From Kudoa neothunni (lineage: Eukaryota > Animalia > Cnidaria): 64,000 nucleotides of DNA. The position numbers were made by a program, and so were the translations under genes. The stretch covers positions 4,887,200-4,951,199 of the forward strand of contig OZ199840.1 in NCBI GenBank assembly GCA_964304625.1. The letters are read 5' to 3'. Each line of letters opens with the position of its first letter. The stretch's first letter is position 1. Below the pieces are notes generated by a model. It was not told the DNA's origin and made no database searches. It saw nothing but the letters and a program-made list of their open reading frames with translations. Below are positions 4,831-51,480 of the stretch, piece by piece.

Positions 4831-7765
4831 TTAATTCTTCTTCTTTATGAAAACAACTATAACCCCCGCAAGAACAACCACACCTGCAGCTGCAGCAGCT
4901 ATTATTATTCTATATAATTGATTATTTTAATATATATATCAGCAATATTATTTTTACATGGTATTTTTGGATCTAAAATAAAAATATTAAATAAACTGGT
5001 TAAATGAGAATTAGATTACGTAGATTTCATTGTGTCGAACCGTTTCTCCTAAAATGAAATAAATATTTCAATGACGATTCATATTTACCTTTCTTGATTT
5101 CACTATTTCCTTTGATTGATTGGTCATTGCTTACGTAAACCGTTAGATGATAATCGTTTGTGTCTTCAACGTCATAAATTTCAAATTCGTTACATTTTGG
5201 TAGACTTGCACAACCTCCATCGTTTTCCCCATTGCATGATTTAATTAAAACTTTATCAGTATTGGTTGAATCTCTTAATTCCCAACCACAAGTGCTTTTC
5301 AGCAACTCCCCTGTGGCAGTACCGTGGTGATTTTTAATTTGTTTCCATCACGCTTAATGCTCACTATAATTTGTTTGTTTAAATCTTGGTTTGTTGGTAG
5401 GGGATCTAATTTTAATTTTTATATTATTTATAATCAGAATGATGTTATAAAATTTTCGAATAAATTCTACTTTCCGGAATTTCAAGGTTTACTTTCACTC
5501 TTCCATTAACTGAAGTTACTGCTACACGATACTTTTTTAATCGGTCGTAATTGTTAGTGAATAATATTTCGGAACATAAAGGAATCTCAGTGCATGAAGA
5601 TAACGATGGTGAAATAGTTTTTTTTGTTGTCGAGGTAGTTTGACCAGGAGCCGATCTAGCTAACGTGATTTTATCATATTTCGATCTAACAGTGGATCCT
5701 TTTGTTGGTTCTGTAGAAATAGATGCCTGTGGACATTGATAAATCAACTTATATTTGTCTCCATTTTTAATTTCCACATTGTAATGACACTCAGCTGTAT
5801 CATCCGGAGTAGATAATGTGCCTATTATTTTGAAACCTTTATCAACAAATTGTTTCTCAAGTGTGAGTTTTGATTTCACTAAAAATTCATTATTTATTTT
5901 TTTAATTAATTATATACCTGTTGTGATCTGATGTATTTTTGTGCCATAGTCTTTATGAGCAACAACTTTAAGGTCATATTCTGTTCCTGATTTAATCCAA
6001 CAATTGTTTGATTCTCCCTGCAATAACCTCGACAGGGATAGCTACCGACGCACATTGCACAGACATACACATCTTTTCCTCGGGGGACTAACATAATAAG
6101 CACATGTAATGTCACTAGCAGTTAAAACTGCATCTCCACCTATAGCCTTGATAGAAGCAGTTCTCTCTCCTAACGTTGGTGTTACAGCAGGGAATGTTGT
6201 TGTATCACTTTTTTCTATATAATTATCAAAAACAATTTTTACTTATATTTTTACTCGTTCGAAAGAATATATGCTCTTTAAATCCGGTCGGGATGCCAGT
6301 GGCACTTGTAGTAGGTGCAATTGTAAGTATATATGGTTTACCACTTGAAAGTCCTGTTATTGTTAAAGCAGCGCTGCAGTCTGTTGAACTGGTGCCAGCC
6401 GAAACTTCACATGTAACTCCGGTTCCAACACTTGGTAGTGGTTTGTCTGCTGCATAATATTTCACCGAACAACTGTCAAATTTAATGTTTCCCGCTGGAT
6501 TAAATAATTTAACGTTTAAGGTGACACCATTTTTGTTGATATTTGTTAATAATGCCTCCTCGGCAGCTGTAGATTCGGTCACCACTAAGAGGTATTATTT
6601 AAAAGTTAAAATACTCAAATTACCAAACTTTTTCTGTTCGTATCCGGAATACGTTTGGGTATTTCATTGTTAAAGGGAAATGTCTGGATTGGATCAATAT
6701 ATCGACTACAGTTTTTGACCCAGTAAAAATTAATATGACATCATTACAAGGAGCGTAACAATCTTAGTCGTTCCACCACAATTTGATGTATATACATTGG
6801 ACGTAGTAGCGCTAGATGCCGGCTCATGATATTTAATACTGAATCGACATATTTCGAAGGGAAATTTGTTTGTGAATTTTATCAGATATTTACTTTTATC
6901 ATTATCATTATATTTAACATAATATTGTGGTTTATAAACATCCATATTCATCAAAGTATATGCATTTTGCAATTTATAAAAGAAACTTGGATAGCCACCA
7001 CATCTCATTTCGTAATGAGGTATCATCAAATCAAATTCTACCAGGTCATTACTGTCGCTTGCAGCAGTGCAACTATTTGAAACAATTCCTGCTGCGTATT
7101 GTACTCCTTTATAATATATGGAACATGCAACTGGTTTGCATGTGATGGTGCTTAACTTTAGTTTCTTGTCTGCTGTAATTGTTATTGTAACTTGTGGATT
7201 AATCAATAATGCTAATGACGTATTAATAAAACAGAAAACGTCACTATTTTACCTAATTCAAGTCCGAACACTGTCCCACCATTTGTTGTCTGGGTAGGAG
7301 CTGCACCACCTTCCCCTGTGAATACCACCACATATTTAGTCCTTGGTGAAAATTTATCGAATGCAAATTTATTGCCATCCCCTCCACATGTTCTACAACA
7401 ACTATTATTTGCACATTCACCGCCGGTTGGAGCAGTGGTATCAACGGCTTCATAACTACTAAGGTTTTCAGCAGACTTTTTGATACAACACTTTTTAGGA
7501 TCACCGAAATCACTACCAGTCAGTTTTAACTGAACATTTGTTCGGCTATCCTTCGGAATAGAATAACTGAGTGCCTTTGTAGGAGCTTGTGATGGAGTCG
7601 GAGGTTTTGTTGCAACCACTGTTTGTGTCGGAACCGAAGTTTGAACTTGAACCGGTCCTCCATCAAGTGAAACGAACTCAGCTATATTTTATTAAAAATA
7701 GAGTTTAATTGTTAATTACAAGAAGTGACCAAGCATATTCCAAACAAGTGGACTAATAGTTTCAT
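4831..7765 (-). pseudogene. FN3-like module type I membrane protein, copy 1 (10 exons, frameshifted in this assembly)
   Basis: ATG 7765 (MKLLVHLFGICLVTS), same exon layout as copy 4, ends IKKKN-TAA at 4831. At least six 1-nt indels versus paralogues (about 6765, 6660, 5991, 5300, 5310, 5040), mostly in homopolymers. Could be a real pseudogene or assembly error. Confidence 0.75.
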
Positions 7766-16340: not shown

Positions 16341-17861
16341 TAGGGTTTCCCGATCAATGTGAGAATTATTGCAATAAAACCGAGAACTTTTGCAATTAAT
16401 GCAAGAAAGTTTCGATTAAACTGGTCTTAGTATAAAATAATTTTTATTTCGTTTATTGTTTAACTAACATTAGCTTCCATCCTTAACCTCCTCGGTATAG
16501 ATTAAAAATGGTGGTTCCCCGATTATAACACGTGATAGTTCCTGATCAAGTCAAGATTTAATGTTTTTTGATTCATAAAGTAAATAACTATATTTAAATT
16601 ATAATGAGTTTATTTAAAAATATATTATTTATATTTATTTCGCCGTCAACTTTTGATACTAGGATGGAACTAAACTCAGAAAATATCCGAAATAAAAAAA
16701 TGATGTCTACTATTCCTGATGAAGATAGAGTTAAAATTATCAACAAGTCACTCGAAGGAAAATCTACGAAACAAATATCTGAAGATCATTCCATTAATTA
16801 TAAGTGTGTTTGGAGAACCATAAACAATTATAACAAGAATGGTTGCATACGTATCCAGAACCGTGGTGGCGATAAAAAGTCAAAGTTGTCTCATGATCAA
16901 AAACGTGAAATTTTATCATTGGTTGACTCTGATTGTTTATTGAGGTTAAATGACATGAAAAGAATGATTCAGGAAAAATTTAATATTTCTGTGAGCAAAA
17001 GAACACTTGACAGAATACTTCAAAATTTTCATTATACAATAAAATGTACTGTACCGATTCCTGAGCGTAGAAATTGTGTGTCTACAATCGAAACTAGATA
17101 TACCTACGCAAAGGATTTTAGAAAATTCGAGCTGGACATGGAGGATAACACATTTATCTTTATGGATGAAGTAAGGTTTCCTGTTGTTACGCGACCAAAA
17201 AGAGAACGGGCTGCTCGAGGTGCTTCTTCATATGTTTCTGTTTCGGCCGCAAGAAGCAGAAACATTTCAGTAGTGGCAGCAATGAATAAATATGGAATGA
17301 TATTTCATAAAATTCAGGATAAGGCGGTGAACGGTGAGGATTTTAAAAGTTGTCTAATTGAAATAAAGGAGGCATATACTTTAAAAAACATTAATGATCC
17401 TATCTTTATTTTGGACAATGCGCGTATTCACCATTATAAAGGACTTAAAGACACTATAGACTTGCTCGGACTCAAGTTATTCTTCTTGTCGCCATACTCC
17501 CCATTTCTGAATTCAATAGAAAATATATTTTCTGTTTGGAAAAATTTGGTAATAAGAGGAGAAGCCAAAAATGAAATGGAACTTAAGGAGTTAATCTCTG
17601 ACAAATTTGATGAAATTACCTCTTCCCATTGTGATAGCTTCTTCAGAAAATGCTAAGGTATCCCCAAAAGGCTGAAAATAGGGAAATAATAAATCAGTAA
17701 TATATTTTTATCCAAATATACTTAAATATATATTGGTTGTTATTATATTATTGAATAGTTTTTATGCGCAATTTAAGTCTAAGTTAATTAAAATGAGTCT
17801 CATTAATTGCAATAGTTCTCGGTTTGATTGCAACAATTCTCACTTTGATCGGGAAACCCTA
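16341..17861 (+). mobile_element. Tc1/IS630-family DNA transposon, nearly intact
   Basis: About 61-bp TIRs TAGGGTTTCCCGATCAA.GTGAGAATT... with 4 mismatches and a TA TSD. Confidence 0.95.
16604..17656 (+). CDS. DD34E transposase
   Basis: HTH-like N-terminus. Catalytic FMDE, ILDNARIHH, LSPYSPFLNSIE with 34 residues between the second D and E. Probable 1-nt loss in an A-run near 17650, since the alternative frame continues MLRYPQKAENREIINQ. Confidence 0.9.
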   Translation: MSLFKNILFIFISPSTFDTRMELNSENIRNKKMMSTIPDEDRVKIINKSLEGKSTKQISEDHSINYKCVWRTINNYNKNGCIRIQNRGGDKKSKLSHDQKREILSLVDSDCLLRLNDMKRMIQEKFNISVSKRTLDRILQNFHYTIKCTVPIPERRNCVSTIETRYTYAKDFRKFELDMEDNTFIFMDEVRFPVVTRPKRERAARGASSYVSVSAARSRNISVVAAMNKYGMIFHKIQDKAVNGEDFKSCLIEIKEAYTLKNINDPIFILDNARIHHYKGLKDTIDLLGLKLFFLSPYSPFLNSIENIFSVWKNLVIRGEAKNEMELKELISDKFDEITSSHCDSFFRKC

Positions 17862-22111: not shown

Positions 22112-25030
22112 TTAATTCTTCTTCTTTATGGAAACGACTATAACCGCTGCAAGAACAACCACACCTGCAGCTGCAGCAGCTATTATTATTCTATATAATT
22201 AATTACGTTAATATGTAACAACAATATGTATTTTTACATGGTATTTTTGGATCTAAAATAAAAATATAAATAAACTGGTTAAAGGAGAATTAGATTACGT
22301 AGATTTCATTGTGTCAAACGTTTCTCCTAAAATGAAATTAATATTTCAATGACGATTCATATTCACCTTTTTTGATTTCACTATTTCCTTTAATTGACTG
22401 GTCATTGCTTACGTAAACCGTTAGATGATAATCGTTTGTGTCTTCAACGTCATAAATTTCAAATTCGTTACATTTTGGTAGACTTGCACAACCTCCATCG
22501 TTTTCCCCATTGCATGATTTAATTAAAACTTTATCAGGATTAGTTGAATCTCTTAATTCCCAACCACAAGTGCCTTCGGCTACTCCCTGGGGCAGTAACG
22601 TGGTGATCTTTAATTTGTTTCCATCACGCTTAATGTTTACTATAATTTGTTTGTTTATATCCTGGTTTGTTGGTAGGGGATCTAATTTTATTCATTTATA
22701 TTATTTATAATTGTAATATTATGAAATTTTTGAAAAAAATTTTACTTTCTGGGATTTCAAGGTTAGCTTCCACTCTTCCATCAACTGTAGTTACTACTAC
22801 ACGATACTTTTTTAATCGATCATAACTATTAGTGAATAAGATTTCGGAACATAACGGAATCTCAGTGCATGTAGGGGGAGATTGTGAACTAGCTTTATTT
22901 GTTGGAGGAGTAGTTTGATCAGCAGCCGACCTAGCTACCATGATTTTATCATATTTCGATTTAACAGTGGATCCTTTAGCTGGCTCTGTAGAAATAGATG
23001 CTTGTGGACATTGGTAAATCAACTTATATTTATCTCCATTTTTAATTTCGACATTATAATGGCATTTAGCTGTATCATCTGGGGTAGATAATGTGCCTAT
23101 TATTTTGAAACCTTTATCAACAAATTGCTTATCAAGTGTGAGAGTCGATTTCACTAAAAATTCATCATTTATTTTTTTATCTAATTATATACCTGTTGTG
23201 ATCTGATGTATTTTGGTGCCATAGTCTTTATGAGCAACAACTTTAAGGTCATATTCTGTTCCTGGTTTTAATCCAACAATTGTATGTGTCTCCCTGCAAT
23301 AGCCTCGACAAGGATAGCTATCGACGCACATTGCACAAACGTACACATCCTTTCCTCTGGGACTAACATAATAAGCACATGTAACGTCATCACTTGTTAG
23401 ACCTTGTTCTCCAACTATGGCTTTGATTGAAGCAGTTCTCTCTCCTAATGTTGGTGTTACTTCAGGAAATGTTTTTGCGTTGTCTTTTTCTACATAATTA
23501 TCAATAAAAGTTATTAATTATTTCTAATTTTTACCCGTTCGAAAGAATATATGCTCTTTAAATCCGGTTGGTACGTTACTTGATACTGTGGGTGTAATTG
23601 TAAGTATATATGGTTTACCGCTTGAAAGCCCAGTTATTGTTAAAGTTGTGCTGCAGTCTTTTGGACAAGCAGTATTAGAAGTCGCACAATTAGCTTCTGC
23701 CCCATCAGTTGGTGGTGGTTTGTCTGCTGCATAATATTTCACTGTACAAGTTGAAAATTTAGTGACTTCATTTGGGTTAAATAGTGGAACATTCAAAGTA
23801 ACGCCGTTTTTTTTTATGTTTGATAATAATGCATCTTCAGAAACAGATGATTCAGTCACGACTACGAGAACTTATTTTAAAGTAAAAATACTCAAATTAC
23901 CAAACTTTTTCTGTTCGTATCCGGGATATTTAATGGTATGTAATTGTAATGGAAAGTGTCTGGATTTGATCAATATATCGACTACAGTTTTTGAAGCAGT
24001 AGAAGTTAGTACAACATCATTACAAGGAGCATAACATTCTTTATTTGTTCCACCACAATTCGAAGTGTACACATTGGACGTAGTAGCGCTAGATGCCGGC
24101 TCATGATATTTAATACTGAATCGACATATTTCGAAGGGAAATTTGTTTGTGAATTTTATCATATATTCACTTTTACCATTATTATTATATTTAACATAAT
24201 ATTGTGGTTTATAAACATCCATTTTCATCAAAGTATATGTGTTTTGCAATTTATAAAAGAAACTTGGATAGCCACCACACCTCATTTCATAATGAGGTAT
24301 CATCAAATCAAATTCAACCATGTCATTACTGCTGCTTGCAGTAGTACAACTACTCCCCACAGGTCCTGCTGCGTATTGTACTCCTTTGTAATATATGGGA
24401 CATGCAACTGGTTTGCATGTGACAGTGCTTAATTTTAGTTTCTTATCTTCTGTGATTGTTATTGTAACTTGTGGATTAACCAATAATGCTAATGACGAGT
24501 TAAAAAACATAAAATATCATTAGTTTACCTATTTCAAGTCCAAACACTGTTCCACCATTAGTTTTTTGGATTGTAGTTGCCCCAGCTACCCCAGTAAAAA
24601 CCACCACATACTTTGTCCTTGGTGAAAATTTATCAAAGGTCCATTTATTATCGTTTCCTTCACATGTTCTACAACAATTCGCTGCGCATTGACTGTCGGG
24701 TTGAGAGCAGGTATCTATGCCTTCATAACTTCTAAGGTTCTCATCAGATTTTTCAATGTAACATTTGATGGAATTGCCAAATTCACTACCAGTCAGTTTT
24801 AATTGAATTTTTGGCCCGTCATTCTCTTTTAGAATAATATAGCTGAGTGCCTTTGGTGGAGCTTCTGCTGGAGCCGGAACCGTAGCTCTTCCTCCAGAAG
24901 AATGTTGAACATCTGCATCTTCCGCATCGAGTGAAACAAGCATAGCTATATTTTGTTTAAAAATAGAATTTAATTTTTAATTACAAGAAATGAACAACAA
25001 AATTCCAAAAAAGTGTACTAATAATTTCAT
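22112..25030 (-). CDS. FN3-like module type I membrane protein, copy 3
   Basis: ATG 25030 (MKLLVHFFGILLFIS), 10 exons colinear with copy 4, open frame in the exons checked, ends IKKKN-TAA at 22112. Confidence 0.88.
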
Positions 25031-26600: not shown

Positions 26601-28005
26601 ATGCCCATTCATTCGTGCAAATTTCGTTTTTTCGTGTTCGCGTCCTCTTTTAGTTACATTATGTCAAACTGGAGTGTGGAAAGTGTTGAAGAAACTTTGA
26701 AAGCTGGTAGACTTTTCTCTTGGAAGAATCTACAACGTCTTCTAAACATTGGGACAATTTCTGTTCCATCATTACTAAACACGGGGATGAAACATCCTAA
26801 ATTGATTCCATTGTTTGCACAAAGTGCAACAAAGCATTCCCTCACAAGTCGTCTTTCGAGAATAGGAAACTTCTTACTCGTAGTAAGTTACATACACAAA
26901 CAAATGGATATAAAAATTAGTGAATTATTTGTTTCACCTCCGTCTACTGTTAATTTAAACGTATCAGATCAGGTAATGATTGACATTAAAATTGCTAATT
27001 TTGTAGGTGAAACAATCTCCCCGTTTACAATAAAAAAAAGTTCATCGTTTACAGAGATGGTAAACTTTACATTTAACTTAGGCAACAAATTCAATGAAAC
27101 TAGTGCTAGGCTTAAGATTTTATCCAAAAAATGCGTTAAAAAAATAATTATAAATGAGTATGAGCGCATGTATTTAAAAATGGAAAAATTAATGAAAACA
27201 ATAAATCACAATAGTATGTGCCTAATCGTTGATATTTGGACTGATAATGCCAAAATTAACTCATTCATTGATATATCAGTGTTGTTTGTTAAAAATTTCA
27301 CCCTTCAACATTTCAAATATGACATGATCTATTTTCCTATAAAACACTGCAGAAAATATAAATAGAATCTGCAAGGAATTTTGTACTAAATTTTCACTTG
27401 GAAAATCTGATTTAATAATTGTTTGTGACTCCGCAGCAAACAATCTATCAGGTCTAAAAGAATTCAACACAACGAGATGTGCTGCTCACCGCCTTTATAC
27501 TGTTATATCTCAAGGTATAGCCGTGGGCAGATAGCACATCGGTGTGACACTCGGACTCAGAACCTTGAGGTAATAGGTTCTAATCAGCCAATGGTCAGAC
27601 CACTGCATCCATGTCGGTGGGTGTCTATCCCATATTTGGGAGCTATGGTTAAAGTGTACGCTCGCTGTGGAGTGGGATGCACTGTCAGCCAGATTTGCAT
27701 GAATAGGAGTTTGAATCTCCGGAACCCATCGAAAGGCAAATAATTTGTGGTCCTCACACAGCGAACGTCCTTAAAGGGATAGGGTCTGAGGTGGTGGTCG
27801 CCCTGAGACGAGGATGTTTAATGGGTTAAAACCCCACACTACCACATAAAGATAAGCGACGGGATTTCATGTTACGTCCTGCGGTGCCTAAAGCGTTAAT
27901 GGAAGAGGTCTGACCAGCCAGAATTCCACAACCTAATAAGTTGCGCCAGGGTTTTTGCCTTGTAAACAAAAAAAACATTAACAAACAGCAAAAACTTAAA
28001 CAGTC
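26601..28005 (+). mobile_element. hAT (Hermes-like) transposase fragment
   Basis: LIVDIWTD, IVCDSAANN and RCAAHRLYTVISQ motifs. The frame resumes as ALTNSKNLNS after the SINE. Confidence 0.7.
27515..27975 (+). mobile_element. tRNA-derived SINE-like element
   Basis: GC-richer island with Pol III A-box-like TAGCACATCGG and B-box-like GGTTCTAATC at tRNA spacing, and an A-rich tail. It splits a codon of the hAT frame. No clear TSD. Confidence 0.7.
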
Positions 28006-28259: not shown

Positions 28260-31110
28260 ATGAAACTACTGGTGCACTTCTTTGGAATTTTATTTCTTAT
28301 TTCTGGTAATTAATAATTAAATTTTTAATATTTTAATAAAATATAGCTACGTTAGTTTCACTTGATGTGGGAACTGTTGATGTTCAACTTCCTGTTGGAG
28401 AACAAGCTGCGGCTGCGGTACAAACTCAAAGTTCTAAACAAGCTCCTGCAAAGGCACTCAGTTACTCCGTTTTAAAAGGAGAGAGTGAAATAAAGGTTCG
28501 ATTAAAACTGACTGGTAGTGATTTTGATGGATCTAAAAGATGTTATATCCAAAAGTCTGCTGAAGACGTTAACAGTTATACAGACATAGATACATGTTCT
28601 GGTAGTGTGGGTCAGTTCCCAAATAATAATTGTTGTAGAACATGTGTGGGAGATGACAATAAATTGACCTTTGATAAATTTTCACCAAGGACTAAGTATG
28701 TGGTGGTTTTTACTGGGGACGCTACAGCAACAACAATCCAAAAAACTAATGATGGAACAGTATTCGGACTTGAATTAGGTAAACTAATGAGGTTTTATGT
28801 TTTCTTAATTCGTCATTAGCATTATTGGTTAATCCACAAGTTACAATAACAATCACAGAAGATAAGAAACTAAAATTAAGCACTGTCACATGCAAATCAG
28901 TTGCATGTCCCATATATTACAAAGGAGTACAATACGCAGCAGGAACTGCTTCAAGTACTAGTAATGATAACGAAGTGGAATTTGATTTGATGATACCTCA
29001 TTACGAAATGAGATGTGGTGGCTATCCAAGTTTCTTTTATAAATTGCAAAACACATATACTTTGATGAATATGGATGTTTATAAACCACAATATTATGTT
29101 AAATATAATGATAATGGTAAAAGTAAATATTTGATAAAATTCACAAACAAATTTCCCTTCGAAATATGTCGATTCAGTATTAAAGATAAGGATACTCCAG
29201 TTGATGCGGGTACAAATAATGAATATACTTCAAATTGTGGCGGAACAAAAAAAGAGTGTTACGCTCCTTGTAATGATGTCGAATTAACTTTTACTGCTTC
29301 AAAAACTATAGTCGATGTATTAATTCAAACCAGACATTTTTCTTTGAAAAAAGATAACACGAATTATTCCGGATATCACCAGAAAAAATTTGGTAATTTG
29401 AATATTTTAACTTATAAATAATCCCTCTTAGTTGTGACTGAACCTTCCGCATCTGGGAGTGCATTATTATCTAACACCAAAAAAGATGGTGTCACTTTGA
29501 ATGTTCCTCTATTTAATCCATCAGAAGACAACAAATTTGACAGTTGTACGGTGGCCTATTATGCAGCTGACAAACCACCACGAACTGATGGGGCAGGTGC
29601 TAAATGTGGTGGTTCGACTAGCTCATGTAAAACTGACTGCAACACTGCTTTAACAATAACTGAACTTTCAAATGGTAAACCATATATACTTACAATCACA
29701 CTCACAAAAACAACTGAATCCGCCTCAAACTTTAAAGAGCACATATTCTTTCGAACGGGTAGAGATATATATAAGTAATAATTTGTATTGATAATACTAT
29801 AGAAAACGATAACACAAAAACCTTTTCTGCTGTAAAACCAACTTTAGGCGAAAGAACCGCATCGATCAAGGCTATAGATGGCGTCGAATCTTTAAAACCT
29901 GTAGATATTACATGTGCTTATTATATTAGTCCCCGAGGAAAGGATGTGTACGTTTGTGCAATGTGCGTCGATAGCTATCCCTGTCGTGGTTACTGCAAGG
30001 AGACACAAACAATTGTTGGATTAAAATCAGGAACAGAATATGACCTTAAAGTTGTTGCTCATAAGGACTATGGCACCAAAATACATCAGATCACAACAGG
30101 TATATAATTAGTTAAAAAAATAAATAATGAATTTTAAGTGAAATCAACACTCACACTTGAGAAGCAATTTGTTGATAAGGGTTTCAAAATAATAGGAACA
30201 CTGTCTACCCCAGATGATACAGCTAAATGCCATTATAATGTCGAAATTAAAAATGGAGACAAATATAAGTTGATTTATCAATGTCCACAGGCATCTATTT
30301 CTACAGAACCAACAAAAGGATCCACTGTTAAATCTAATTCACCATCGTTATCTTCATGTACTGAGATTCCTTTATGTTCCGAAATATTATTCACTAACAA
30401 TTACGACCGATTAAAAAAATATCGTGTAGCAGTAACTACAGTCGATGGAAGAGTGGAAGCTAACCTTGAAATCCCAGAAAGTAAAATTTTTTCAAAAATC
30501 TCATATTACAATTATAAATAATATAAATGAATAAAATTAGATCCCCTACCAACAAACCAAGATTTAAACAAACAAATTATAATAAGCATAAAACGTGATG
30601 GAAACAAATTAAAAATCACCACGGTACTGCCACAGGGAATAGCCGAAGGCACTTGTGGTTGGGAATTAAGAGATTCAACCAATCCTGATAAAGTTTTAAT
30701 TAAATCATGTAATGGGGAAAACGATGGAGGTTGTGCAAGACTTCCAAAATGTAAAGAATTTGAAATCGTTGACGTTGAAGACACAAACGATTATCATTTG
30801 ACGGTTTACGTAAGCAATGACCAATCAATCAAAGGAAGTAGTGAAATCAAGAAAGGTGAATATGAACCGTCATTAAATTATTCATTCCATTTTAGGTGAA
30901 ACGTTTGATACAATGAAATCTACGTAATCTGATTCTCATTTAACTAGTTTATTTATATTTTTATTTTAGATCCAAAAATACCATGTAAAAATACATATTA
31001 CTGCTATATATTAACATAATTAATTATATAGAATAATACTAGTAGCAGCTGTTGTAGGTGTGGTTGTCCTTGCAGCGGTTATAGTTGTTTTCATAAAGAA
31101 GAAGAATTAG
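28260..31110 (+). CDS. FN3-like module type I membrane protein, copy 4 (817 aa by my splice model)
   Basis: Exons 28260-28305, 28347-28778, 28820-29392, 29432-29758, 29803-30099, 30139-30480, 30541-30855, 30896-30923, 30970-30984, 31032-31110. All introns are GT-AG, 39-60 nt, and the 2454-nt total stays in frame. Signal peptide MKLLVHFFGILFLISA, FN3 motif [41 protein letters not shown], tail KKKN. Confidence 0.92.
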
Positions 31111-39892: not shown

Positions 39893-42800
39893 TTAATTCT
39901 TCTTCTTTATGAAAACAACTATAATGGCTGCAAGGACAACCACACCTACAACAGCTCCTACTACTATTATTCTATATAATTAATTATGTTAATATGTAGC
40001 AACAATATGTATTTTTACATGGTATTTTTGGATCTAAAATAAAAATATAAATAAACCGGTTAAATGAGAATTAGATTACGTAGATTTCATCGTGTCAAAC
40101 GTTTCTCCTAAAATGAAATGAAGAATTGGAACACGATTCATATTTACCTTTCTTGATTTCACTAATTCCTTTGATTGATTGGTCATTGCTTACGTAAACC
40201 GTTAGATGATAATCGTTTGTGTCTTCAACGTCAACGATTTCAAATTCGTTACATTTTGGTAGACTTGCACAACCTCCATCGTTTTCCCCATTACAGGATT
40301 TAATTAAAACTTTATCAGTATTGGTTGAATCTCTTAATTCCCAACCACAAGTGCTTTCAGCTACTCCCTGTGGCAGTACCGTGGTGATCTTTAATTTGTT
40401 TCCATCACGCTTAATGCTCACTATAATTTGTTTGTTTAAATCCTGGTTTGTTGGTAGGGGATCTAATTTTATTCATTTATATTATTTATAATTGTAATAT
40501 TATGAAATTTCTGAAAAAGTTTTACTTTCTGGGAATTCAAGGTTAGCTTCCACTCTTCCATCAACTGTAGTTACTACTACGCGGTATTTTTTTAATCGAT
40601 CATAATTATTAGTGAATAATATTTCGGAACATAAAGGAATCTCAGTGCATGAGGATAACGATGGTGAATTAGATTTATTTGTTGGTGGAGCAGTTTTATC
40701 AGCAACCGATCTAGCTATCGTAATTTCATTATATTTCGATTTAACAGTGAGTCGGTTAGTTGATTCTGTAGAAATAGATGCCTGTGGACATTGATAAATC
40801 AACTTATATTTTTCTTCATTTTTAATTTCGACATTATAATGGCATTTAGCTGTATCATCTGGGGTAGACAGTGTTCCTATTATTTTGAAACCCTTATCAA
40901 CAAATTGCTTCTCAAGTGTGAGTGTTGATTTCACTTAAAATTCATTATTTATTTTTTTAACTAATTATATACCTGTTGTGATCTGATGTATTTTGGTGCC
41001 ATAGTCCTTATGAGCAACAACTTTAAGGTCATATTCTGTTCCTGATTTTAATCCAACAATTGTTTGTGTCTCCTTGCAGTAACCACGACAGGGATAGCTA
41101 TCGACGCACATTGCACAAACGTACACATCCCTCCCTCGGGGACTAATGTAATAAGCACATGTAATGTCTTCAGGTTTTAAAGATTCTTCGCCATCTATAG
41201 CCTTGATCGATGCGGTTCTTTCGCCTAAAGTTGGTTTTACAGCAGAAAATGTTTTTGTGTTATCATTTTCTATAGTATTATCAATACAAATTATTACTTA
41301 TATATATCTCTACCCGTTCGAAAGAATATATGCTCTTTAAAGTTTGAGGGGGTTTCAGTTGTTTTTGTGAGTGTGATTGTAAGTATATATGGTTTACCAC
41401 TTGAAAGTCCTGTTATTGTTAAAGCAGCGCTACAGTCTGCTGAACAGGTGCCAGCCGAAACTTCACATGAAACTCCTGTTCCAACACTTGGTAGTGGTTT
41501 GTCTGCTGCATAATAGGCCACCGTACAACTGTCAAATTTGTTGTCTTCTGATGGATTAAATAGAGGAACATTCAAAGTGACACCATCTTTTTTGATGTTA
41601 GATAATAATGCACTCCCAGATGCGGAAGATTCAGTCACAACTAAGAGGGATTATTTATAAGTTAAAATATTCAAATTACCAAATTTTTTCTGGTGATATC
41701 CGGAATAATTCGTGTTATCTTTTTTCAAAGAAAAATGTCTGGTTTGAATTAATACATCGACTATAGTTTTTGAAGCAGTAAAAGTTAATTCGACATCATT
41801 ACAAGGAGCGTAACACTCTTTTTTTGTTCCGCCACAATTTGATTTATATTCATTATTTGTATTCACATTAACTAGAGTATCCTTATCTTTAATACTGAAT
41901 CGACATATTTCGAAGGGAAATTTGTTTGTGAATTTTATCAGATATTTGCTTTTATCATTATCATTATCATTATATTTAACATAATATTGTGGTTTATAAA
42001 CATCCATATTCGTCAAAGTATATATATTTTGCAATTTATAAAAGAAACTTGGATAGCCACCACATCTCATTTCATAATGAGGTATCATCAAATCGAAGTC
42101 CACTTCGTTATCATTTGTGTTTGCGACAATACAACTACTCCCCACAGTTCCTGCTGCGTATTGCACTACTTTGTAATATATAGGGCATGTAACTGGTTCG
42201 CATGTGATGGTGCTTAATTTTAGTTTCTTTTGATCTGTAATTGATATTGTAACTTGTGGATTAACCAATAACGCTAATATCAAGTTAAGAAAACATAAAG
42301 CATCATTAGTTTACCTAATTCAAGTCCAAACACTGTTCCACCATTAGTTTTCTGGGAAAGATCTGTGGCCCCATTCCCTGTGAAAACCACTACATACTTT
42401 GTCCTTGGTGAAAATTTATCGAAGGCAAATTTATTTCCCTCTCCCTTACATGTTCTACAACAACTATTATTATTGCATTCACCGTCGGTTTGAGGAGTGG
42501 TATCTATGTCTTCATAACTACTGAGGTTTTCAACAGACTTTTTGATACAACATTTTTTAGAATCACCGAAACCACTACCAGTCAATTTTAACTGAACATT
42601 TATTCCGCTATCCTTCAGAATAGAATAACTGAGTGCCTTTGTAGGAGTTTTTTCTATAGCTGGAGTTTGTGCTGAAGTTGGAGTTGGAGTTGGTGCTGAA
42701 GTTGGAGTTGGAGTTGGTGCTGAAGTTGGAGTTGGAGTTGGTGCTGAAGTTGGAGTTGGAGTTGGTGCTGAAGTTGGAGTTGGAGTTGGTGCTGAAGTTG

Positions 42801-42989
42801 GAGTTGGAGTTGGTGCTGGAGTTAGAGGTTGTGTTGCAACCACTGGTAGTGTTGGACTCGAAGATTGAACTTGAACAGTTTCTCCATCAAGTGAAATGAA
42901 CCCCGCTATATTTTATTAAAAATGGAATTTATTTGTGATTTACAAGAAATGACCAGCAAAATTCCATAAAATTGTACTAATAGTTTCAT
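39893..42989 (-). CDS. FN3-like module type I membrane protein, copy 5
   Basis: ATG 42989 ([15 protein letters not shown]), colinear 10-exon structure, expanded PT-rich stalk, ends IKKKN-TAA at 39893. Confidence 0.9.
42671..42814 (-). repeat. Coding minisatellite, 6 x 24 bp (PTPTPTSA units)
   Basis: Six perfect copies of GCTGAAGTTGGAGTTGGAGTTGGT. Confidence 0.95.
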
Positions 42990-47805: not shown

Positions 47806-50800
47806 TTAATGTGGATTTTTATGTATTTTGCCTCTTTTTAGAAATTTATTAGCTACAAGATGTTTCTTTCCAATATCACTGTTCCAGCGGGTATTTTCTG
47901 CTTTTACGGTGTTTTGAGGCTCTAAATATTTTCACATCAAAGTAAATAATAATTGTAAAAGTATTAGTCATTATTTGTATAGCCAATAAAATTCAGCATA
48001 CCTGGAACCAATAATAAATTATATTTAGCTGGTTCATCGATGTAATTATTTGGATATTCGATCGAAACCGACAAATGATCGACAACAGTTCCCTCTTTCA
48101 TTGTAGCTTGTAATAAGTATAATTTATTCTTTTTCAGTTCAATCAATTCAGAATGTTGTGTAGTAGGATATCTAGGAGTTATTCAGTGAAATTATGTAAG
48201 ATCTAATCATTAAAATACTTGTCATTTTGTCGATATGAGGAATAATGCCCATTGCGAAGAGTGATCAATGATTTGAGATTGTCCTCGGTTTCATCATCAC
48301 TCAATCGAAGTTCGCATTCGTTGTCGCATGACATATAGAAGATGAATTTACCAGAGATGTTTGGCTATTGTAATATAAAATATCAACATAAAAAACAAAA
48401 CTTACTTTGAAGTAGGCTGACCAATCGTTGGCCGTAACCGTCCCCAGCATTTGGAGGAGCCTCAAAACTGTCCAATATCAAAAATTCATCAGGAGAATCA
48501 GGATAGCGGCTGCTATTGTAAAGGTAGTCTAAACTGGAGCTAGTACCCAAATTGAACCAAGCTTCTCTTAACACACCAAAATTGGATTCTAAGTTTTTTG
48601 TGGTCATTCGTACATATCTAGTTCTTAACATAGTTCAAATACCATTTTTTTCAATAGATACACGAGGCTGAATATAATAATCATGCTGATTGACTTCGAA
48701 GTCAGACCATTTGATATCGTTTGAAATCCCACTTATTGCTATTAGTTTTACATCATTAATTCTTTGATATAATTTATCACAATAGATTTTACTAGGAGGT
48801 TTCAAAGGAGCAGGGGTTTGTTCTGAATTGTGCATAGGTGGGACAATGTTTAACGATATCTGAGGGATATCTTCCAATTTAGTTGGTTGATAAGATTCTG
48901 TTATTAATAACAGTTAAGCTTAGAAGAACTTTTATATTTTAATCACCCTGATTATAATTAGGTGCAGTTGTGGTTGGGATCATATTCGTACTAAACATTA
49001 AAGGTACGGGAGGGGTGTTACAAAAGAAATGAGTTTGTTCCTTCGGTACGCATATATTTAATGAGGGATCGAACACATTTCCAATGTCACATCTTTTAGA
49101 AATGGGATTATATCCATTGCACTCAATATAAGCGTTGCATCCATTTATCAAGTCGGGACACACCGAATCCGGTAAAGTACAACATATGGGAGAATTCGGA
49201 TTAGGAACATTAGTTTCAGTCGCAAACTAATTCATACATATTAAACAATAAATGTCGAAAAATAGCTCACATTATTAGCTCCTCTGAATCCTTCTAAAAA
49301 GTGAAATTCTGACGCAGGGTCTGATTTTACCGATTGGTGGTTGGCTGTAATGAGGGATAGGAGGAATGATGGGCTTAATATTTGGAAAGTTTATGTCACC
49401 CAAATTATCTAGTGTATATTTCTGATTGGAATCTACTACAATGTTTCGCTTAGGAGATTCCATTGTTGGTGCACCTTATTTTTTTTTTAATATCAATGTG
49501 TTAATAATTGTAAATTTACTAGTTGTGGTAGTTTCTTCAACTTTGTCATTCTAAATAAGGTTAAGCATTAGTAGCTACTCAAAAAAACTACCATGATTTC
49601 CTTATCTTCTTTGTCTGATGCAGTATCTAATGTGACTGGTGATTTATTAAAAAGAGCTATATTTTCAGGTCCAGTCACAATATTAACACTCCCTTTATTT
49701 TTATCTAGTTCAGAATGGTAAGCTTTATCATTTATTTTGAAAAAGTCATAATCTACATAAACAATAGAAATATTGTAATTAGAAAATTTGCGTTTACTTG
49801 AAATTTTCTTAAATACGTTATTAGGACTGGTTAATTCTACAACACCATCGAAGCAAAACGCTATATTATCTATAGTGGTTTTGTTGAGATCTTTCCATTG
49901 CTCATCACCACCAAATAATTTGAATTTAAATTTATTGTCGATAGTCGTCCCAATAACAACATCCTGTTTATTTGAAACCACATTTTGTAGTTTAATATCG
50001 TCAGGATTCCAAAAATTTCCTTCAATTAAATTAAATTTATTAAATCAAATTATTGTAAGTTGTTTTAAATATAGTTATGTACCAAACGGGTTTTCTTTGT
50101 TGATGTTATTTCGAGAAAATGTTTCATTGCTATCTGTTATGCCCCAGCATCTTCCCTCACCACAGGCAATCGACCTGAAGAGTTTAATGCCGTTAGGCAA
50201 TTTCCACCAGTCATTATTATTCATTTTGGATCTATTTGAAACACATCAAACAATCTTTTTAAAAAAGTTGAGATTTACATTTCAGACAAAGGTCTCACAA
50301 ATATATTTCCATTGACACTCAAAATCCAAACAACTTGGCTGTTCACACAGGAAACTGAGTCCACAGGTTCAGGAGACATCATACGGGTCCAATTATTGTA
50401 CTCTATTTCCATAAACCCTCATTATATTTGAACTATTAAATTTATACTTTTTATGTATCTGGCCAAAAGTGTAGAATTTCTAGTGACCGCCCACACAATG
50501 TCGAAACAAACAATGTATTTATCGACAGGTTCAGTGCCTTCAAAAGGGATTTCAAATTGTAGTGGTGTTGGGTTTTCATTGTAACTATCCATATTGATCT
50601 TAGAATCACTACTGGTAAAAAGATAGGATTGGTCATGACAGTCATAGATTTTGACTGGTTGTGAAACTGTGGGTTTTGTGATCCCCATCTTTTTGGGGCT
50701 TTCCGATTCGGCGATACAAAGGGCTTTTTCGCAATGTGGATGCGACATTGGACACCTACTACAAATGGTTCCCTTTATATAGGGCTGTTTTGCCGGAATA

Positions 50801-51480
50801 TTTCCTCCCGGTACGTAGTTGCAAATGAGAATAGTTTTATCTTCGCTGCATTTTTTAGCAGCACACGCCATTTTGTTGGTTTCAGCCCATATCATTTGTG
50901 TGTATAGACTGCATTTGCCGACGCATTCATTTTTATCGTAATTGTATTTTTTAGATTGCAGTATCCAACGCTTTATACCTTCGAATACGTCTCCACATTG
51001 GTAGGCGTTGCCAGTGGGTCCATTACACATCCCTGATCCCCACGCAATATTTTCACCCACCCACACATGTCGTTGACTACATACAATAAATTTAAACCGA
51101 ATAACTCATGTATTTGAAAACTTTGGCTTTGATTCTTCATTATTGCTCAAACGATCATAGAGTTGATGACGTTGTTTATTGTGAGCCAACTGACATTTTT
51201 CCACATAATTGGTAGTAATATTTTCTAGGGCGTCATCCCACGTTAATTTTTGCATATTTGCAGCTGTGGGATACACGTTTGATCGATAGTGATTGTGTAA
51301 GGCGAGAATAAGTTGTTTTTGAATATTGGTAAGACCATCATCTCCAATGATTGTGCCATCAAGGGTTTGGTTGTAAACAGTGACATCCGAGCTTACCACC
51401 ACCAATACTAAATGTAATCAACATTGAATATCAACCTAATAGATTACATATTATTCCAAATATAATTGTTTTCAAACCTA
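47806..51480 (-). CDS. Multi-exon secreted protein: CAP domain, tectonin-like repeats, CBM14 chitin-binding domain, PA14 domain
   Basis: Signal-like LKTIIFGIILLVVVSS. CAP motifs LHNHYRS..AANMQKLTWD, GENIA, YTQMIWA, ICNYVPGGN. Tectonin-like WWKLPNG..SIACGEGRCWGITDSNETFSRNNINKENPFG. CBM14-like CNAYIEC..CDIGNVFDPSLNIC. PA14-like FEAPPNAGDGYGQRL..FYMSCDNECELRLS..MKEG..DHLSV. Probable stop at 47806. The first exon and some junctions are unresolved. Confidence 0.8.

What the first reader, a model, noticed from the sequence alone, without database searches (positions are those of the whole stretch)
41379..41515. Paralogues are mosaics: patchwork gene conversion with breakpoints in conserved blocks
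Seen: in exon 4, copy 5 matches copy 4 up to YYAADKP, switches to the copy 1 sequence ([22 protein letters not shown], about 5 mismatches in 137 nt versus 6323-6459), then returns to copy 4 after GKPYILTI. Pairings flip along the gene: exon 2 (1,5)(3,4); late exon 3 (1,3: YHEPASSATTSNVY)(4,5: DKDT..NNEY); early exon 7 (1,5: AEST..TNTD)(3,4: AEGT..TNPD); late exon 7 and TM (1,3)(4,5). Intron 4 is identical in copies 4 and 5. Inference: segmental gene conversion swaps variable loops as cassettes and generates combinatorial diversity, as in antigenic-variation systems.
Basis: partly seen in the sequence, partly recalled or inferred. Interest (0 to 1): 0.87.

Follow-up and report, generated by a model that had tools for sequence, protein, structure and literature searches.

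The report
Gene-conversion mosaics in Kudoa surface genes
Neighbouring copies of a very large, undescribed surface-protein gene family in the tuna parasite Kudoa neothunni have swapped short DNA segments, so one variable loop has a different ancestry from the gene around it; this is a familiar way for parasites to diversify exposed proteins, but nothing here shows a working antigen-switching system.

Summary
In copy 5 (41379-41515, minus strand) the 137-nt patch differs from copy 1 at 5 sites and from copy 4 at 28. About 435 nt upstream and 540 nt downstream, including introns 3-5, are 97-100% copy-4-like. Across the whole genome, copy 1 is the patch's closest relative (96%, next 80%) and copy 4 is the flanks' closest (97-98%). 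Permutation tests, segment trees (97% against 100% support) and AU tests reject a single history. Synonymous sites show the same pattern, which rules out convergence.

The genes belong to a lineage-restricted family of at least 150 copies. They encode single-pass membrane proteins built from exon-sized, disulfide-stapled FN3-like modules. The patch is a Cys-bracketed hypervariable loop plus the edges of its framework strands.

Copy 1 is a pseudogene. A second cluster on another chromosome repeats the pattern: 147 informative sites fall in 9 blocks.

Best reading: interlocus gene conversion on an evolutionary timescale, reassorting loop variants. Still open: whether the patch was imported or is an unconverted relic, and any somatic antigenic variation. 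This scan's earlier follow-ups reached a similar reading on other windows of the same genome.

The parts
41379..41515 (-). The patch in copy 5, exon 4. It encodes residues 42-87 of the module: the hypervariable loop with three of the module's four conserved Cys, plus the edges of the framework strands. It is copy-1-like.
   Evidence: 5/137 mismatches to c1 against 28/137 to c4. The mismatch-tolerant segment test recovers 41510-41381 at P<=0.001. The tree groups (c1,c5) at 97%. The genome-wide best relative is c1 at 96%. The loop has low pLDDT, between strands, in the FN3-like model.
41516..41950 (-). 5' copy-4-like tract of copy 5 (late exon 3, intron 3, start of exon 4).
   Evidence: c4-c5 differ at 2/327 sites in the core. 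The tree groups (c4,c5) at 100% and AU rejects the patch tree at p<1e-100. The genome-wide best relative is c4 at 98%.
40840..41378 (-). 3' copy-4-like tract of copy 5 (end of exon 4, intron 4, exon 5, intron 5, start of exon 6).
   Evidence: c4-c5 differ at 12/509 sites, with introns 4 and 5 identical. The tree groups (c4,c5) at 100%. The genome-wide best relative is c4 at 97%.
39893..42989 (-). Copy 5, an intact gene with a 10-exon model: signal peptide, Thr/Pro repeat, six exon-sized modules, TM helix and KKKN tail.
   Evidence: All introns are GT..AG, the module exons are in phase 1, and there are no in-frame stops. The model is inferred from sequence only; there is no RNA support.
6323..6459 (-). 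Copy 1's counterpart of the patch (partner or donor).
   Evidence: 96.4% identical to the c5 patch. It carries Ser at the near-invariant Cys65.
4831..7765 (-). Copy 1, a pseudogene.
   Evidence: Frameshifts in exon 3 (-1/+1), exon 5 (+1/-1), exon 7 (+2) and exon 8 (+1) put stops in frame. The indels are not in long homopolymers, and the three neighbouring copies are clean.
29557..29693 (+). Copy 4's version of the loop segment. It has no close relative anywhere in the genome.
   Evidence: The best non-self match is 81% (c3).
28260..31110 (+). Copy 4, intact and inverted relative to copies 1, 3 and 5. It is the partner of copy 5 for the 1.1-kb tract.
   Evidence: The inverted orientation argues against simple unequal crossing-over as the source of the c4-c5 similarity.
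22112..25030 (-). Copy 3, intact. It pairs with copy 4 in exon 2 and early exon 3, and with copy 1 in late exon 3, late exon 7 and the TM region.

Best explanation
The window carries four linked paralogues, three intact and one pseudogene, of a very large Kudoa neothunni-restricted gene family. The family encodes type I membrane proteins: a signal peptide, a Thr/Pro repeat, six exon-delimited, disulfide-stapled FN3-like modules, a TM helix and a short KKKN tail. The paralogues have exchanged DNA segments by non-reciprocal homologous recombination (interlocus gene conversion). As a result, successive segments of one gene have different closest relatives. In copy 5, a segment of 105-141 nt encoding the hypervariable Cys loop of the exon-4 module shares ancestry with pseudogene copy 1. 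About 1 kb around it, introns included, shares ancestry with the inverted copy 4. Exchange endpoints lie in the framework-coding blocks that stay nearly identical between copies. Shown: the mosaic structure, its statistical significance, its presence at synonymous sites, its recurrence in another cluster, and the loop's position in the fold. Inferred: that the mechanism is conversion rather than double crossover; the direction of transfer; and the consequence, that loop variants are reassorted on a framework which conversion keeps homogenising, over evolutionary time. Two histories fit equally well. Either a short tract was imported from a copy-1-like donor into a copy-4-like gene, or a copy-1-like gene was overwritten by copy 4 in two tracts (or one discontinuous tract) that left the divergent loop unconverted.
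For: Mosaic. The two-parent result holds genome-wide. The permutation test recovers the patch, and 10 of 28 pairs carry significant fragments. Segment trees and AU tests (p=0.0006-0.0013 and <1e-50). Synonymous sites follow the mosaic: c1-c5 loop pS 0.10 against flank 0.49 (p=7e-4), and c4-c5 loop pS 0.29 against flank 0.055 (p=0.002). Introns are part of the c4-c5 tract, so this is a DNA-level process. c4 and c5 are inverted. Read level: c5's own patch variant is a 118-nt zero-mismatch unitig at single-copy depth, and a zero-mismatch piece crosses the 3' breakpoint. The assembly is HiFi-based with QV 48.5. Replication: among 69 copies, 4 of the 5 pairs with near-identical flanks have a divergent loop. 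L049 has L053-like flanks (98-99.5%) but a loop 97% identical to a third copy, with loop pS 0.64 against flank 0.026. The second quartet has 147 informative sites in 9 runs against 81.8 +/- 5.3.
Against: No single long read spanning both breakpoints was inspected. The 5' junction is not bridged by any listed Logan piece, and Logan contigs demonstrably mis-phase c4 and c5 across 214 identical nt. All read data come from one fish. Direction and order of events are unresolved: c1-c5 patch 5/137, c4-c5 flanks 14/836 and c1-c5 exon 2 13/151 are not significantly different. Region-wide pN/pS in the patch is 0.64, so selection for diversity is not demonstrated for this loop.
Confidence: 0.8

Rival explanations
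1. A working antigenic-variation system: silent or pseudogene copies such as copy 1 donate loop cassettes to expressed genes during an infection, as in VSG, vlsE, msp2 or VESA1 segmental gene conversion.
For: The family is a large archive with many copies carrying stops. The patch's partner is a pseudogene with an open exon 4. Loops are reassorted combinatorially. The organism is a parasite of a vertebrate with adaptive immunity, and antigenic variation has been suggested for other myxozoans (preprint 10.64898/2026.02.11.705288).
Against: The exchanges carry 1.7-3.6% later divergence, so they are old germline events. Copy 1 has since lost a structural Cys that copy 5 keeps. No variant letters were seen in the patch in three runs, though the test is weak because contigs drop rare variants. 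There is no RNA (PMC12239612 reports very few Kudoa transcript reads), and no evidence of an expression site or of exclusive expression. Tracts also homogenise conserved exons and introns.
Confidence: 0.1
2. Assembly artefact: the patch is copy-1 sequence, or an allele of copy 1, wrongly placed in copy 5 by a low-coverage (about 7x) meta-assembly.
For: K-mer coverage was about 7 and haplotypic duplication had to be purged. The 5' junction is not directly bridged in the pieces shown.
Against: The patch is not a copy of c1. It has 5 private differences, and this version exists in the reads at single-copy depth of 8.5, while the c4/c5-shared flank has about double depth, 13.4. A zero-mismatch piece from another run links c5-specific flank sites to the first copy-1-like site across the 24-nt 3' block. 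HiFi reads are far longer than 137 nt. The same pattern recurs in a cluster on another chromosome.
Confidence: 0.04
3. No conversion: tandem duplication plus unequal crossing-over (birth-and-death) produced chimeric genes, and the apparent patch reflects that duplication history.
For: The copies are clustered. Single-breakpoint switches, such as exon 2 against late exon 3, could be crossover products.
Against: The patch needs two breakpoints 105-141 nt apart inside an otherwise 97-100% identical block. c4 and c5 are inverted, so a crossover between them would invert the intervening DNA rather than copy sequence. The second quartet needs at least 8 switches in 3.2 kb.
Confidence: 0.04
4. Convergent or parallel selection, or local hypermutation, made the loops of copies 1 and 5 alike (or those of copies 4 and 5 unlike) without any exchange.
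For: Loops are the most variable parts (pN 0.25 against 0.07 in the framework). Another loop (41843-41874) shows 5 replacement codons and none purely synonymous between c4 and c5. The pair L030/L051 has loop pN/pS 1.3 with unchanged pS.
Against: Synonymous sites agree with the mosaic in the patch. At 25 of the 28 c4-c5 differences c5 carries exactly c1's base.
Confidence: 0.02

Closest known systems
Interlocus (ectopic) gene conversion in multigene families of surface or recognition proteins (e.g. Plasmodium merozoite surface antigens, PMC10919680; Entamoeba Gal/GalNAc lectin, PMC3125142; MHC class I micro-recombination, PMC2189132)
   Same: Short tracts of about 100-1000 nt are copied between linked paralogues. 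Phylogenies are patchwork, breakpoints lie in shared sequence, and pseudogenes take part.
   Different: The host lineage is a myxozoan cnidarian, and the protein family is an undescribed FN3-like modular family. I found no published report for this group.
Segmental gene conversion in true antigenic-variation systems (Babesia bovis VESA1/ves, PMC7485966; trypanosome VSG mosaics, PMC3472502; Borrelia vlsE and Anaplasma msp2, from general knowledge)
   Same: A large archive that includes pseudogenes, short donor tracts covering variable regions, and a conserved framework as the homology substrate.
   Different: No expression site, no evidence of switching within an infection, and no expression data. 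The events seen here are old and fixed.
Variant surface families proposed for Sphaerospora molnari (VSP-like, RIFIN/STEVOR-like; preprint 10.64898/2026.02.11.705288)
   Same: Expanded single-pass membrane protein families in a myxozoan, interpreted as serving immune evasion, with a short basic tail after the TM helix.
   Different: Those VSPs are more than 10% Cys with CXXC motifs and number 18 genes. This family is about 4% Cys, is built of FN3-like modules and has at least 150 copies. No recombination analysis was reported there.
Engineered FN3 binders (monobodies, Centyrins/Tencon), which are the best structural matches
   Same: A constant FN3 beta-sandwich carrying diversified loops.
   Different: This is a natural protein, with an enlarged loop stapled by conserved cysteines. 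The resemblance is in fold only (9-19% identity).
Hydractinia allorecognition (Alr) gene complex (general knowledge; cited in PMC11792419's reference list)
   Same: A cnidarian cluster of hypervariable Ig-like single-pass receptors with pseudogenes, in which recombination between paralogues has been proposed to generate alleles.
   Different: A different fold family and a free-living host. No functional link was tested here. It is an alternative functional analogy (self/non-self recognition rather than immune evasion).

Membership tests
Interlocus gene-conversion mosaic | A segment whose closest paralogue differs from that of both flanks, checked against all copies in the genome | tested here: met
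   Patch: c1 96%, next best 80%. Flanks: c4 97-98%, with c1 at 81-86%.
Interlocus gene-conversion mosaic | Clustering of shared sites beyond permutation expectation (GENECONV-type test) | tested here: met
   c1-c5 segment 41510-41381, 74 polymorphic sites with 5 mismatches, P<=0.001; 10 of 28 pairs significant. Quartet runs 78 against 137.
Interlocus gene-conversion mosaic | Statistically supported phylogenetic incongruence between adjacent segments | tested here: met
   (c1,c5) 97% against (c4,c5) 100%; AU p=0.0006-0.0013 and <1e-50.
Interlocus gene-conversion mosaic | The pattern holds at synonymous and intronic sites (excludes convergence) | tested here: met
   pS contrasts; introns 3-5 identical in c4 and c5.
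Interlocus gene-conversion mosaic | Mosaic verified on single sequenced molecules spanning both breakpoints | tested here: inconclusive
   The 3' junction and c5's private patch variant are present in 31-mer contigs. The 5' junction is not bridged by a listed piece, and no raw long reads were available.
Interlocus gene-conversion mosaic | Non-reciprocal transfer with an identified donor and recipient | tested here: inconclusive
   Divergence values cannot order the events, so both import and relic remain open.
Antigenic variation by segmental gene conversion | Large archive of silent or pseudogene donors | tested here: met
   At least 150 scored copies, many with internal stops; c1, k1 and k4 are pseudogenes. 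Whether any copy is silent is unknown.
Antigenic variation by segmental gene conversion | Dedicated expression site or mutually exclusive expression | not testable with these tools
   No Kudoa RNA was found: nothing from run X10 was laid, and the genome paper reports very few parasite transcripts.
Antigenic variation by segmental gene conversion | New variants arising within one infection | tested here: inconclusive
   No alternative letters in the patch in three runs of one fish, but contigs drop rare variants and depth is about 7x.
Fibronectin type III domain | Seven-strand beta-sandwich fold matching solved FN3 structures | tested here: met
   AlphaFold model with pLDDT 73.5. The top Foldseek hits are all FN3 or monobody, TM 0.5-0.6, probability 1.00, best E 5e-4.
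Fibronectin type III domain | Sequence match to Pfam fn3 above the gathering score | tested here: not met
   Only exon 5 gives weak hits: fn3 15.7 bits against a cut-off of 25, and FN3_DSCAM 20.5 against 39. Exon 4 gives none. It is FN3-like by fold only.
Giardia / S. molnari-type VSP | More than 10% cysteine with multiple CXXC motifs | tested here: not met
   The exon-4 module has 4 Cys in 108 residues and exon 3 has 8 in 197, about 4%, with no CXXC array.

The most novel reading that the evidence does not exclude
An animal (cnidarian) parasite runs a protozoan-style variant-surface system. In it, hundreds of FN3-like genes and pseudogenes serve as an archive from which Cys-stapled loop cassettes are copied into expressed genes by segmental gene conversion, giving combinatorial surface diversity used for immune evasion or for self/non-self recognition.
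Probability: 0.12. Interest if true: 0.85.

Novelty: new member of a known kind. Interest (0 to 1): 0.55.

Why it matters
Myxozoans are economically important fish parasites, and how they interact with host immunity is largely unknown at the molecular level. The published K. neothunni annotation relied on protein hints from other species, so a family of this size, probably counted among the 'repeats', was not described. The result shows that the family's exposed loops are reshuffled between copies. That gives a concrete set of candidate host-interface proteins and a testable question: which copies are expressed, and does the repertoire change during infection? The mechanism itself, interlocus gene conversion, is well known, so the value lies in the lineage and the family rather than in a new principle.

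Tried and rejected
1. The no-mismatch GENECONV-style run broke the c1-c5 patch at its 5 differences. I replaced it with a mismatch-tolerant score.

2. Idea: the anchor blocks ([15 protein letters not shown]) are kept identical at the DNA level as recombination sites. Rejected: codon homozygosity is 0.55 there against 0.57 at other conserved positions, p=0.91.

3. Region-wide positive selection on the patch is not supported (pN/pS 0.64, 0 of 21 pairs with pN>pS).

4. Pfam on six exons gave only sub-threshold FN3 hints. Rfam and tRNA scans of the window found nothing.

5. Organism: Sphaerospora molnari (40.17 Mb) was considered and rejected, because it has 7 chromosomes and 40 contigs.

6. RNA run X10: nothing was laid.

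7. Logan contigs cannot be used to phase the whole mosaic, because one contig mixes c4 and c5 across 214 identical nt.

8. Relative dating of the two events was not significant either way.

9. Outside relatives (13 weak hits; two traced to anonymous short metagenome contigs) gave no context.

10. One script call returned no answer and was rerun.
Full report
WHAT IS THERE

A self-comparison of the window finds four full-length paralogues: c1 4831-7765(-), c3 22112-25030(-), c4 28260-31110(+) and c5 39893-42989(-).

The genome is AT-rich with GT..AG introns of about 40-60 nt. From copy 5 I derived a 10-exon model with the following parts:
- a signal peptide;
- a Thr/Pro repeat (a 24-nt unit, 7 copies);
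- six module-sized exons, all in phase 1;
- two micro-exons;
- a TM helix with a KKKN tail.

This model is inferred from sequence only. All database searches and the fold were done exon by exon and by reference. The only joined step was a local frame check in a script.

THE OBSERVATION

It holds exactly.
- In 41379-41515, copy 5 differs from copy 1 at 5 of 137 sites and from copy 4 at 28.
- Upstream (41516-41842) c4 and c5 differ at 2 of 327 sites. Downstream (41378-40870) they differ at 12 of 509.
- Introns 3, 4 and 5 are identical between c4 and c5.
- 28 of the 51 c4-c5 differences in the 1.1-kb block lie inside the patch (binomial 4e-13). At 25 of those 28, copy 5 carries copy 1's base.
- The breakpoints can be placed within 41505-41515 and 41376-41399, so the tract is 105-141 nt long.

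Counts are (13|45) / (14|35) / (15|34):
- exon 2: 5 / 4 / 30
- late exon 3: 33 / 0 / 1
- patch: 0 / 0 / 11
- late exon 7: 4 / 0 / 0
- TM/3' end: 17 / 2 / 1
- early exon 7: 0 / 3 / 3, which is too few sites to count.

IS IT MORE THAN CHANCE, AND IS IT REAL?
- Quartet-informative sites fall in 78 runs against 137 +/- 6.6 in shuffles, 0 of 10,000.
- A mismatch-tolerant GENECONV-style test recovers the patch at 41510-41381 (P<=0.001). It finds significant fragments in 10 of 28 pairs among eight copies.
- ML trees give (c1,c5) 97% for the patch and (c4,c5) 100% for each flank. AU tests reject the flank trees on the patch data (p=0.0006 and 0.0013). They reject the patch tree on the flank data at p<1e-50.
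- Searching the whole 40-Mb assembly confirms the two parents. The patch is 96% copy 1 (next best 80%). The flanks are 97-98% copy 4, with copy 1 at 81-86%.
- Convergence is excluded by synonymous sites. For c1-c5, loop pS is 0.10 against 0.49 in the flanks (p=7e-4). For c4-c5, loop pS is 0.29 against 0.055 (p=0.002).

ASSEMBLY ARTEFACT?

The only runs holding the sequence come from one sample and are kept as 31-mer contigs. They show the following:
- Copy 5's own version of the patch, including its five private differences from copy 1, is a 118-nt zero-mismatch piece at depth 8.5.
- The stretch shared by c4 and c5 has depth 13.4, and single-copy parts have depths of 5-8.5.
- A zero-mismatch piece from another run (41315-41405) links copy-5-specific flank sites to the first copy-1-like site, across the 24-nt 3' block.

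No listed piece bridges the 5' junction. One contig mixes c4 and c5 across 214 identical nt, so these contigs cannot phase beyond 31 nt.

The assembly itself is HiFi with hifiasm-meta, QV 48.5, at about 7x k-mer coverage. A 137-nt chimera with private substitutions is an unlikely product of such an assembly. Direct confirmation on spanning reads is still missing.

WHOSE GENOME AND WHAT FAMILY

G000 has contigs of 17,154,348, 12,040,071, 11,048,340 and 18,219 bp. Weber, Paulini and Blaxter (PMC12239612) describe a Kudoa neothunni assembly from infected yellowfin tuna with these features:
- 40.2 Mb in total, with N50 12.0 Mb;
- three chromosome scaffolds;
- an 18,219-bp mitochondrial contig;
- median intron length 49 bp.

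The match is exact, so I take the organism as settled.

That paper's annotation used protein hints from other species and does not mention this family. I found no myxozoan paper in the library that mentions fibronectin type III.

Family size and distribution:
- At least 150 scored matches out of 465 (exon 3) and 350 (exon 4) candidates, on all three chromosomes, many with internal stops.
- Outside this genome, 1.84 billion representative proteins yield only 13 weak, short hits. The two I traced came from anonymous metagenome contigs.

Structure of the exon-4 module:
- It has four conserved Cys.
- It folds as a beta-sandwich with mean pLDDT 73.5.
- Its best structural matches are all FN3 domains or FN3-derived binders (TM 0.5-0.6).
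- Pfam fn3 is not reached at the sequence level.
- The patch encodes residues 42-87. That is the low-confidence, Cys-stapled loop (45-72) plus the ends of the conserved strands on either side.

COPY 1 IS A PSEUDOGENE

Copy 1 has frameshifts in exon 3 (-1/+1), exon 5 (+1/-1), exon 7 (+2) and exon 8 (+1), all with in-frame stops. Its exon 4 is open. The indels are not in long homopolymers, and the three neighbouring copies have none. Within the patch, copy 1 has Ser at the near-invariant Cys65, which copy 5 keeps. So copy 1 has decayed since the shared event.

IMPORT OR RELIC?

The data allow two histories.
- Import: a short tract from a copy-1-like donor entered a copy-4-like gene.
- Relic: copy 5 was copy-1-like, as it still is in exon 2 ((c1,c5) 98%). 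Copy 4 then overwrote it in two tracts, or in one discontinuous tract, leaving the divergent loop unconverted.

The divergences are c1-c5 patch 5/137, c4-c5 flanks 14/836 and c1-c5 exon 2 13/151. They do not differ significantly, so the order of events is open. Copy 4's own loop has no close relative anywhere (81% at best). Either history requires segmental exchange. Because c4 and c5 are inverted, simple unequal crossing-over is unlikely.

IS IT GENERAL?

I compared loop and flank identity in 69 copies.
- Of the five pairs whose flanks are both at least 93% identical, four have a loop of only 80-88% identity.
- In all four, the divergent block maps to the same loop core.
- For L049/L053, flanks are 98.4% and 99.5% identical and the loop 81%. 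Loop pS is 0.64 against 0.026 in the flanks (p=2e-10).
- L049's loop is 97% identical to a third copy 10 kb away.

Aligning four copies of that chromosome-2 cluster shows near-identical frameworks with hypervariable islands that group the copies differently from island to island. The 147 informative sites fall in 9 runs (shuffles 81.8 +/- 5.3). The blocks contain 55, 28, 12, 18, 20 (the exon-4 loop) and 11 sites, and all three possible pairings occur. So reassortment of loop variants is a property of the family.

Not every divergent loop is an exchange:
- L030/L051 has unchanged pS and loop pN/pS 1.3.
- The late-exon-3 loop of c4/c5 has five replacement codons and none purely synonymous.

Point-mutation diversification therefore also acts on the loops.

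WHAT IS NOT SHOWN
- The breakpoints fall in conserved blocks, but those blocks are no more conserved at synonymous sites than other conserved codons (p=0.91). Nothing marks them as dedicated recombination sites.
- Conversion here homogenises long stretches as well as reassorting loops.
- A passive model is enough. Tracts start in near-identical framework and stop at highly diverged loops. Occasionally a tract spans a loop from anchor to anchor. This model is an inference and was not tested.
- Nothing shows somatic switching, an expression site or surface exposure. The one RNA run I laid held no Kudoa reads.

VERDICT

It is a new member of a known kind of process, in an undescribed family and lineage. 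This scan's earlier follow-ups (s1-687395, s1-687414) reported the same family and segment swapping on other windows of this genome, so the phenomenon is not new to the scan. What this report adds:
- the exact two-parent patch and the pseudogene partner;
- the synonymous-site test;
- the import-or-relic ambiguity;
- the negative anchor test;
- an independent replicate cluster.

Noticed in passing
L049, L053, L080, L081 (G000:C2 about 6.59 and 6.82-6.83 Mb): Four copies are 97-100% identical over most of 3.2 kb, apart from a few hypervariable islands. Each island groups the copies differently, and all three pairings occur: 147 informative sites in 9 blocks.
   Followed up: yes
window 41843-41874 (-), late exon 3 loop: Seven c4-c5 differences lie in 32 nt of an otherwise near-identical block. 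All five affected codons are amino-acid replacements, and several states are unique to copy 5. This looks like point-mutation diversification of a second loop.
   Followed up: partly
window 42661-42827 (-), exon 2 of copy 5: A Thr/Pro repeat (24-nt unit x 7, 97% match) makes exon 2 591 nt long in copy 5, against 417-432 nt in the other three copies.
   Followed up: partly
window about 30,230-30,330 (+), exon 6 of copy 4 (c5 40,727-40,807): Copy 4's exon 6 is 66 nt shorter (342 against 408 nt, still in frame). It is unalignable with the others over the variable part (about 30% identity).
   Followed up: no
window 16604-17656 (+): An intact 350-aa ORF with a DDE_3 transposase domain (E=1e-22) and HTH domains lies inside the gene cluster. 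It is a possible active Tc1/mariner-like element.
   Followed up: no
window 26601-27365 (+): A 254-aa ORF with no Pfam match lies between the divergently oriented copies 3 and 4.
   Followed up: no
Its exon-4 module is only 40% identical to copy 5's, and it takes no part in the mosaics analysed here.
   Followed up: partly
L001 (G000:C1:1103100-1107400) and L004 (G000:C1:1344500-1349400): Two of the four closest paralogues on chromosome 1 are also pseudogenes: k1 has frameshifts and stops in exons 4-6, and k4 has stops in exon 6. The k1-k3 tandem copies share long, significant fragments.
   Followed up: partly
window 41505-41917, Logan contig X1 record 3: A public Logan contig carries copy 4's letters at 41843-41874 but copy 5's at 41595 and 41629. 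This is a k-mer assembly chimera across 214 identical nt, and a caution for anyone using such contigs to phase paralogues.
   Followed up: yes
window 50425-51066 (-): An ORF with a CAP (cysteine-rich secretory protein) domain, E=8e-7. It is part of a gene noted by another first-stage finding.
   Followed up: no
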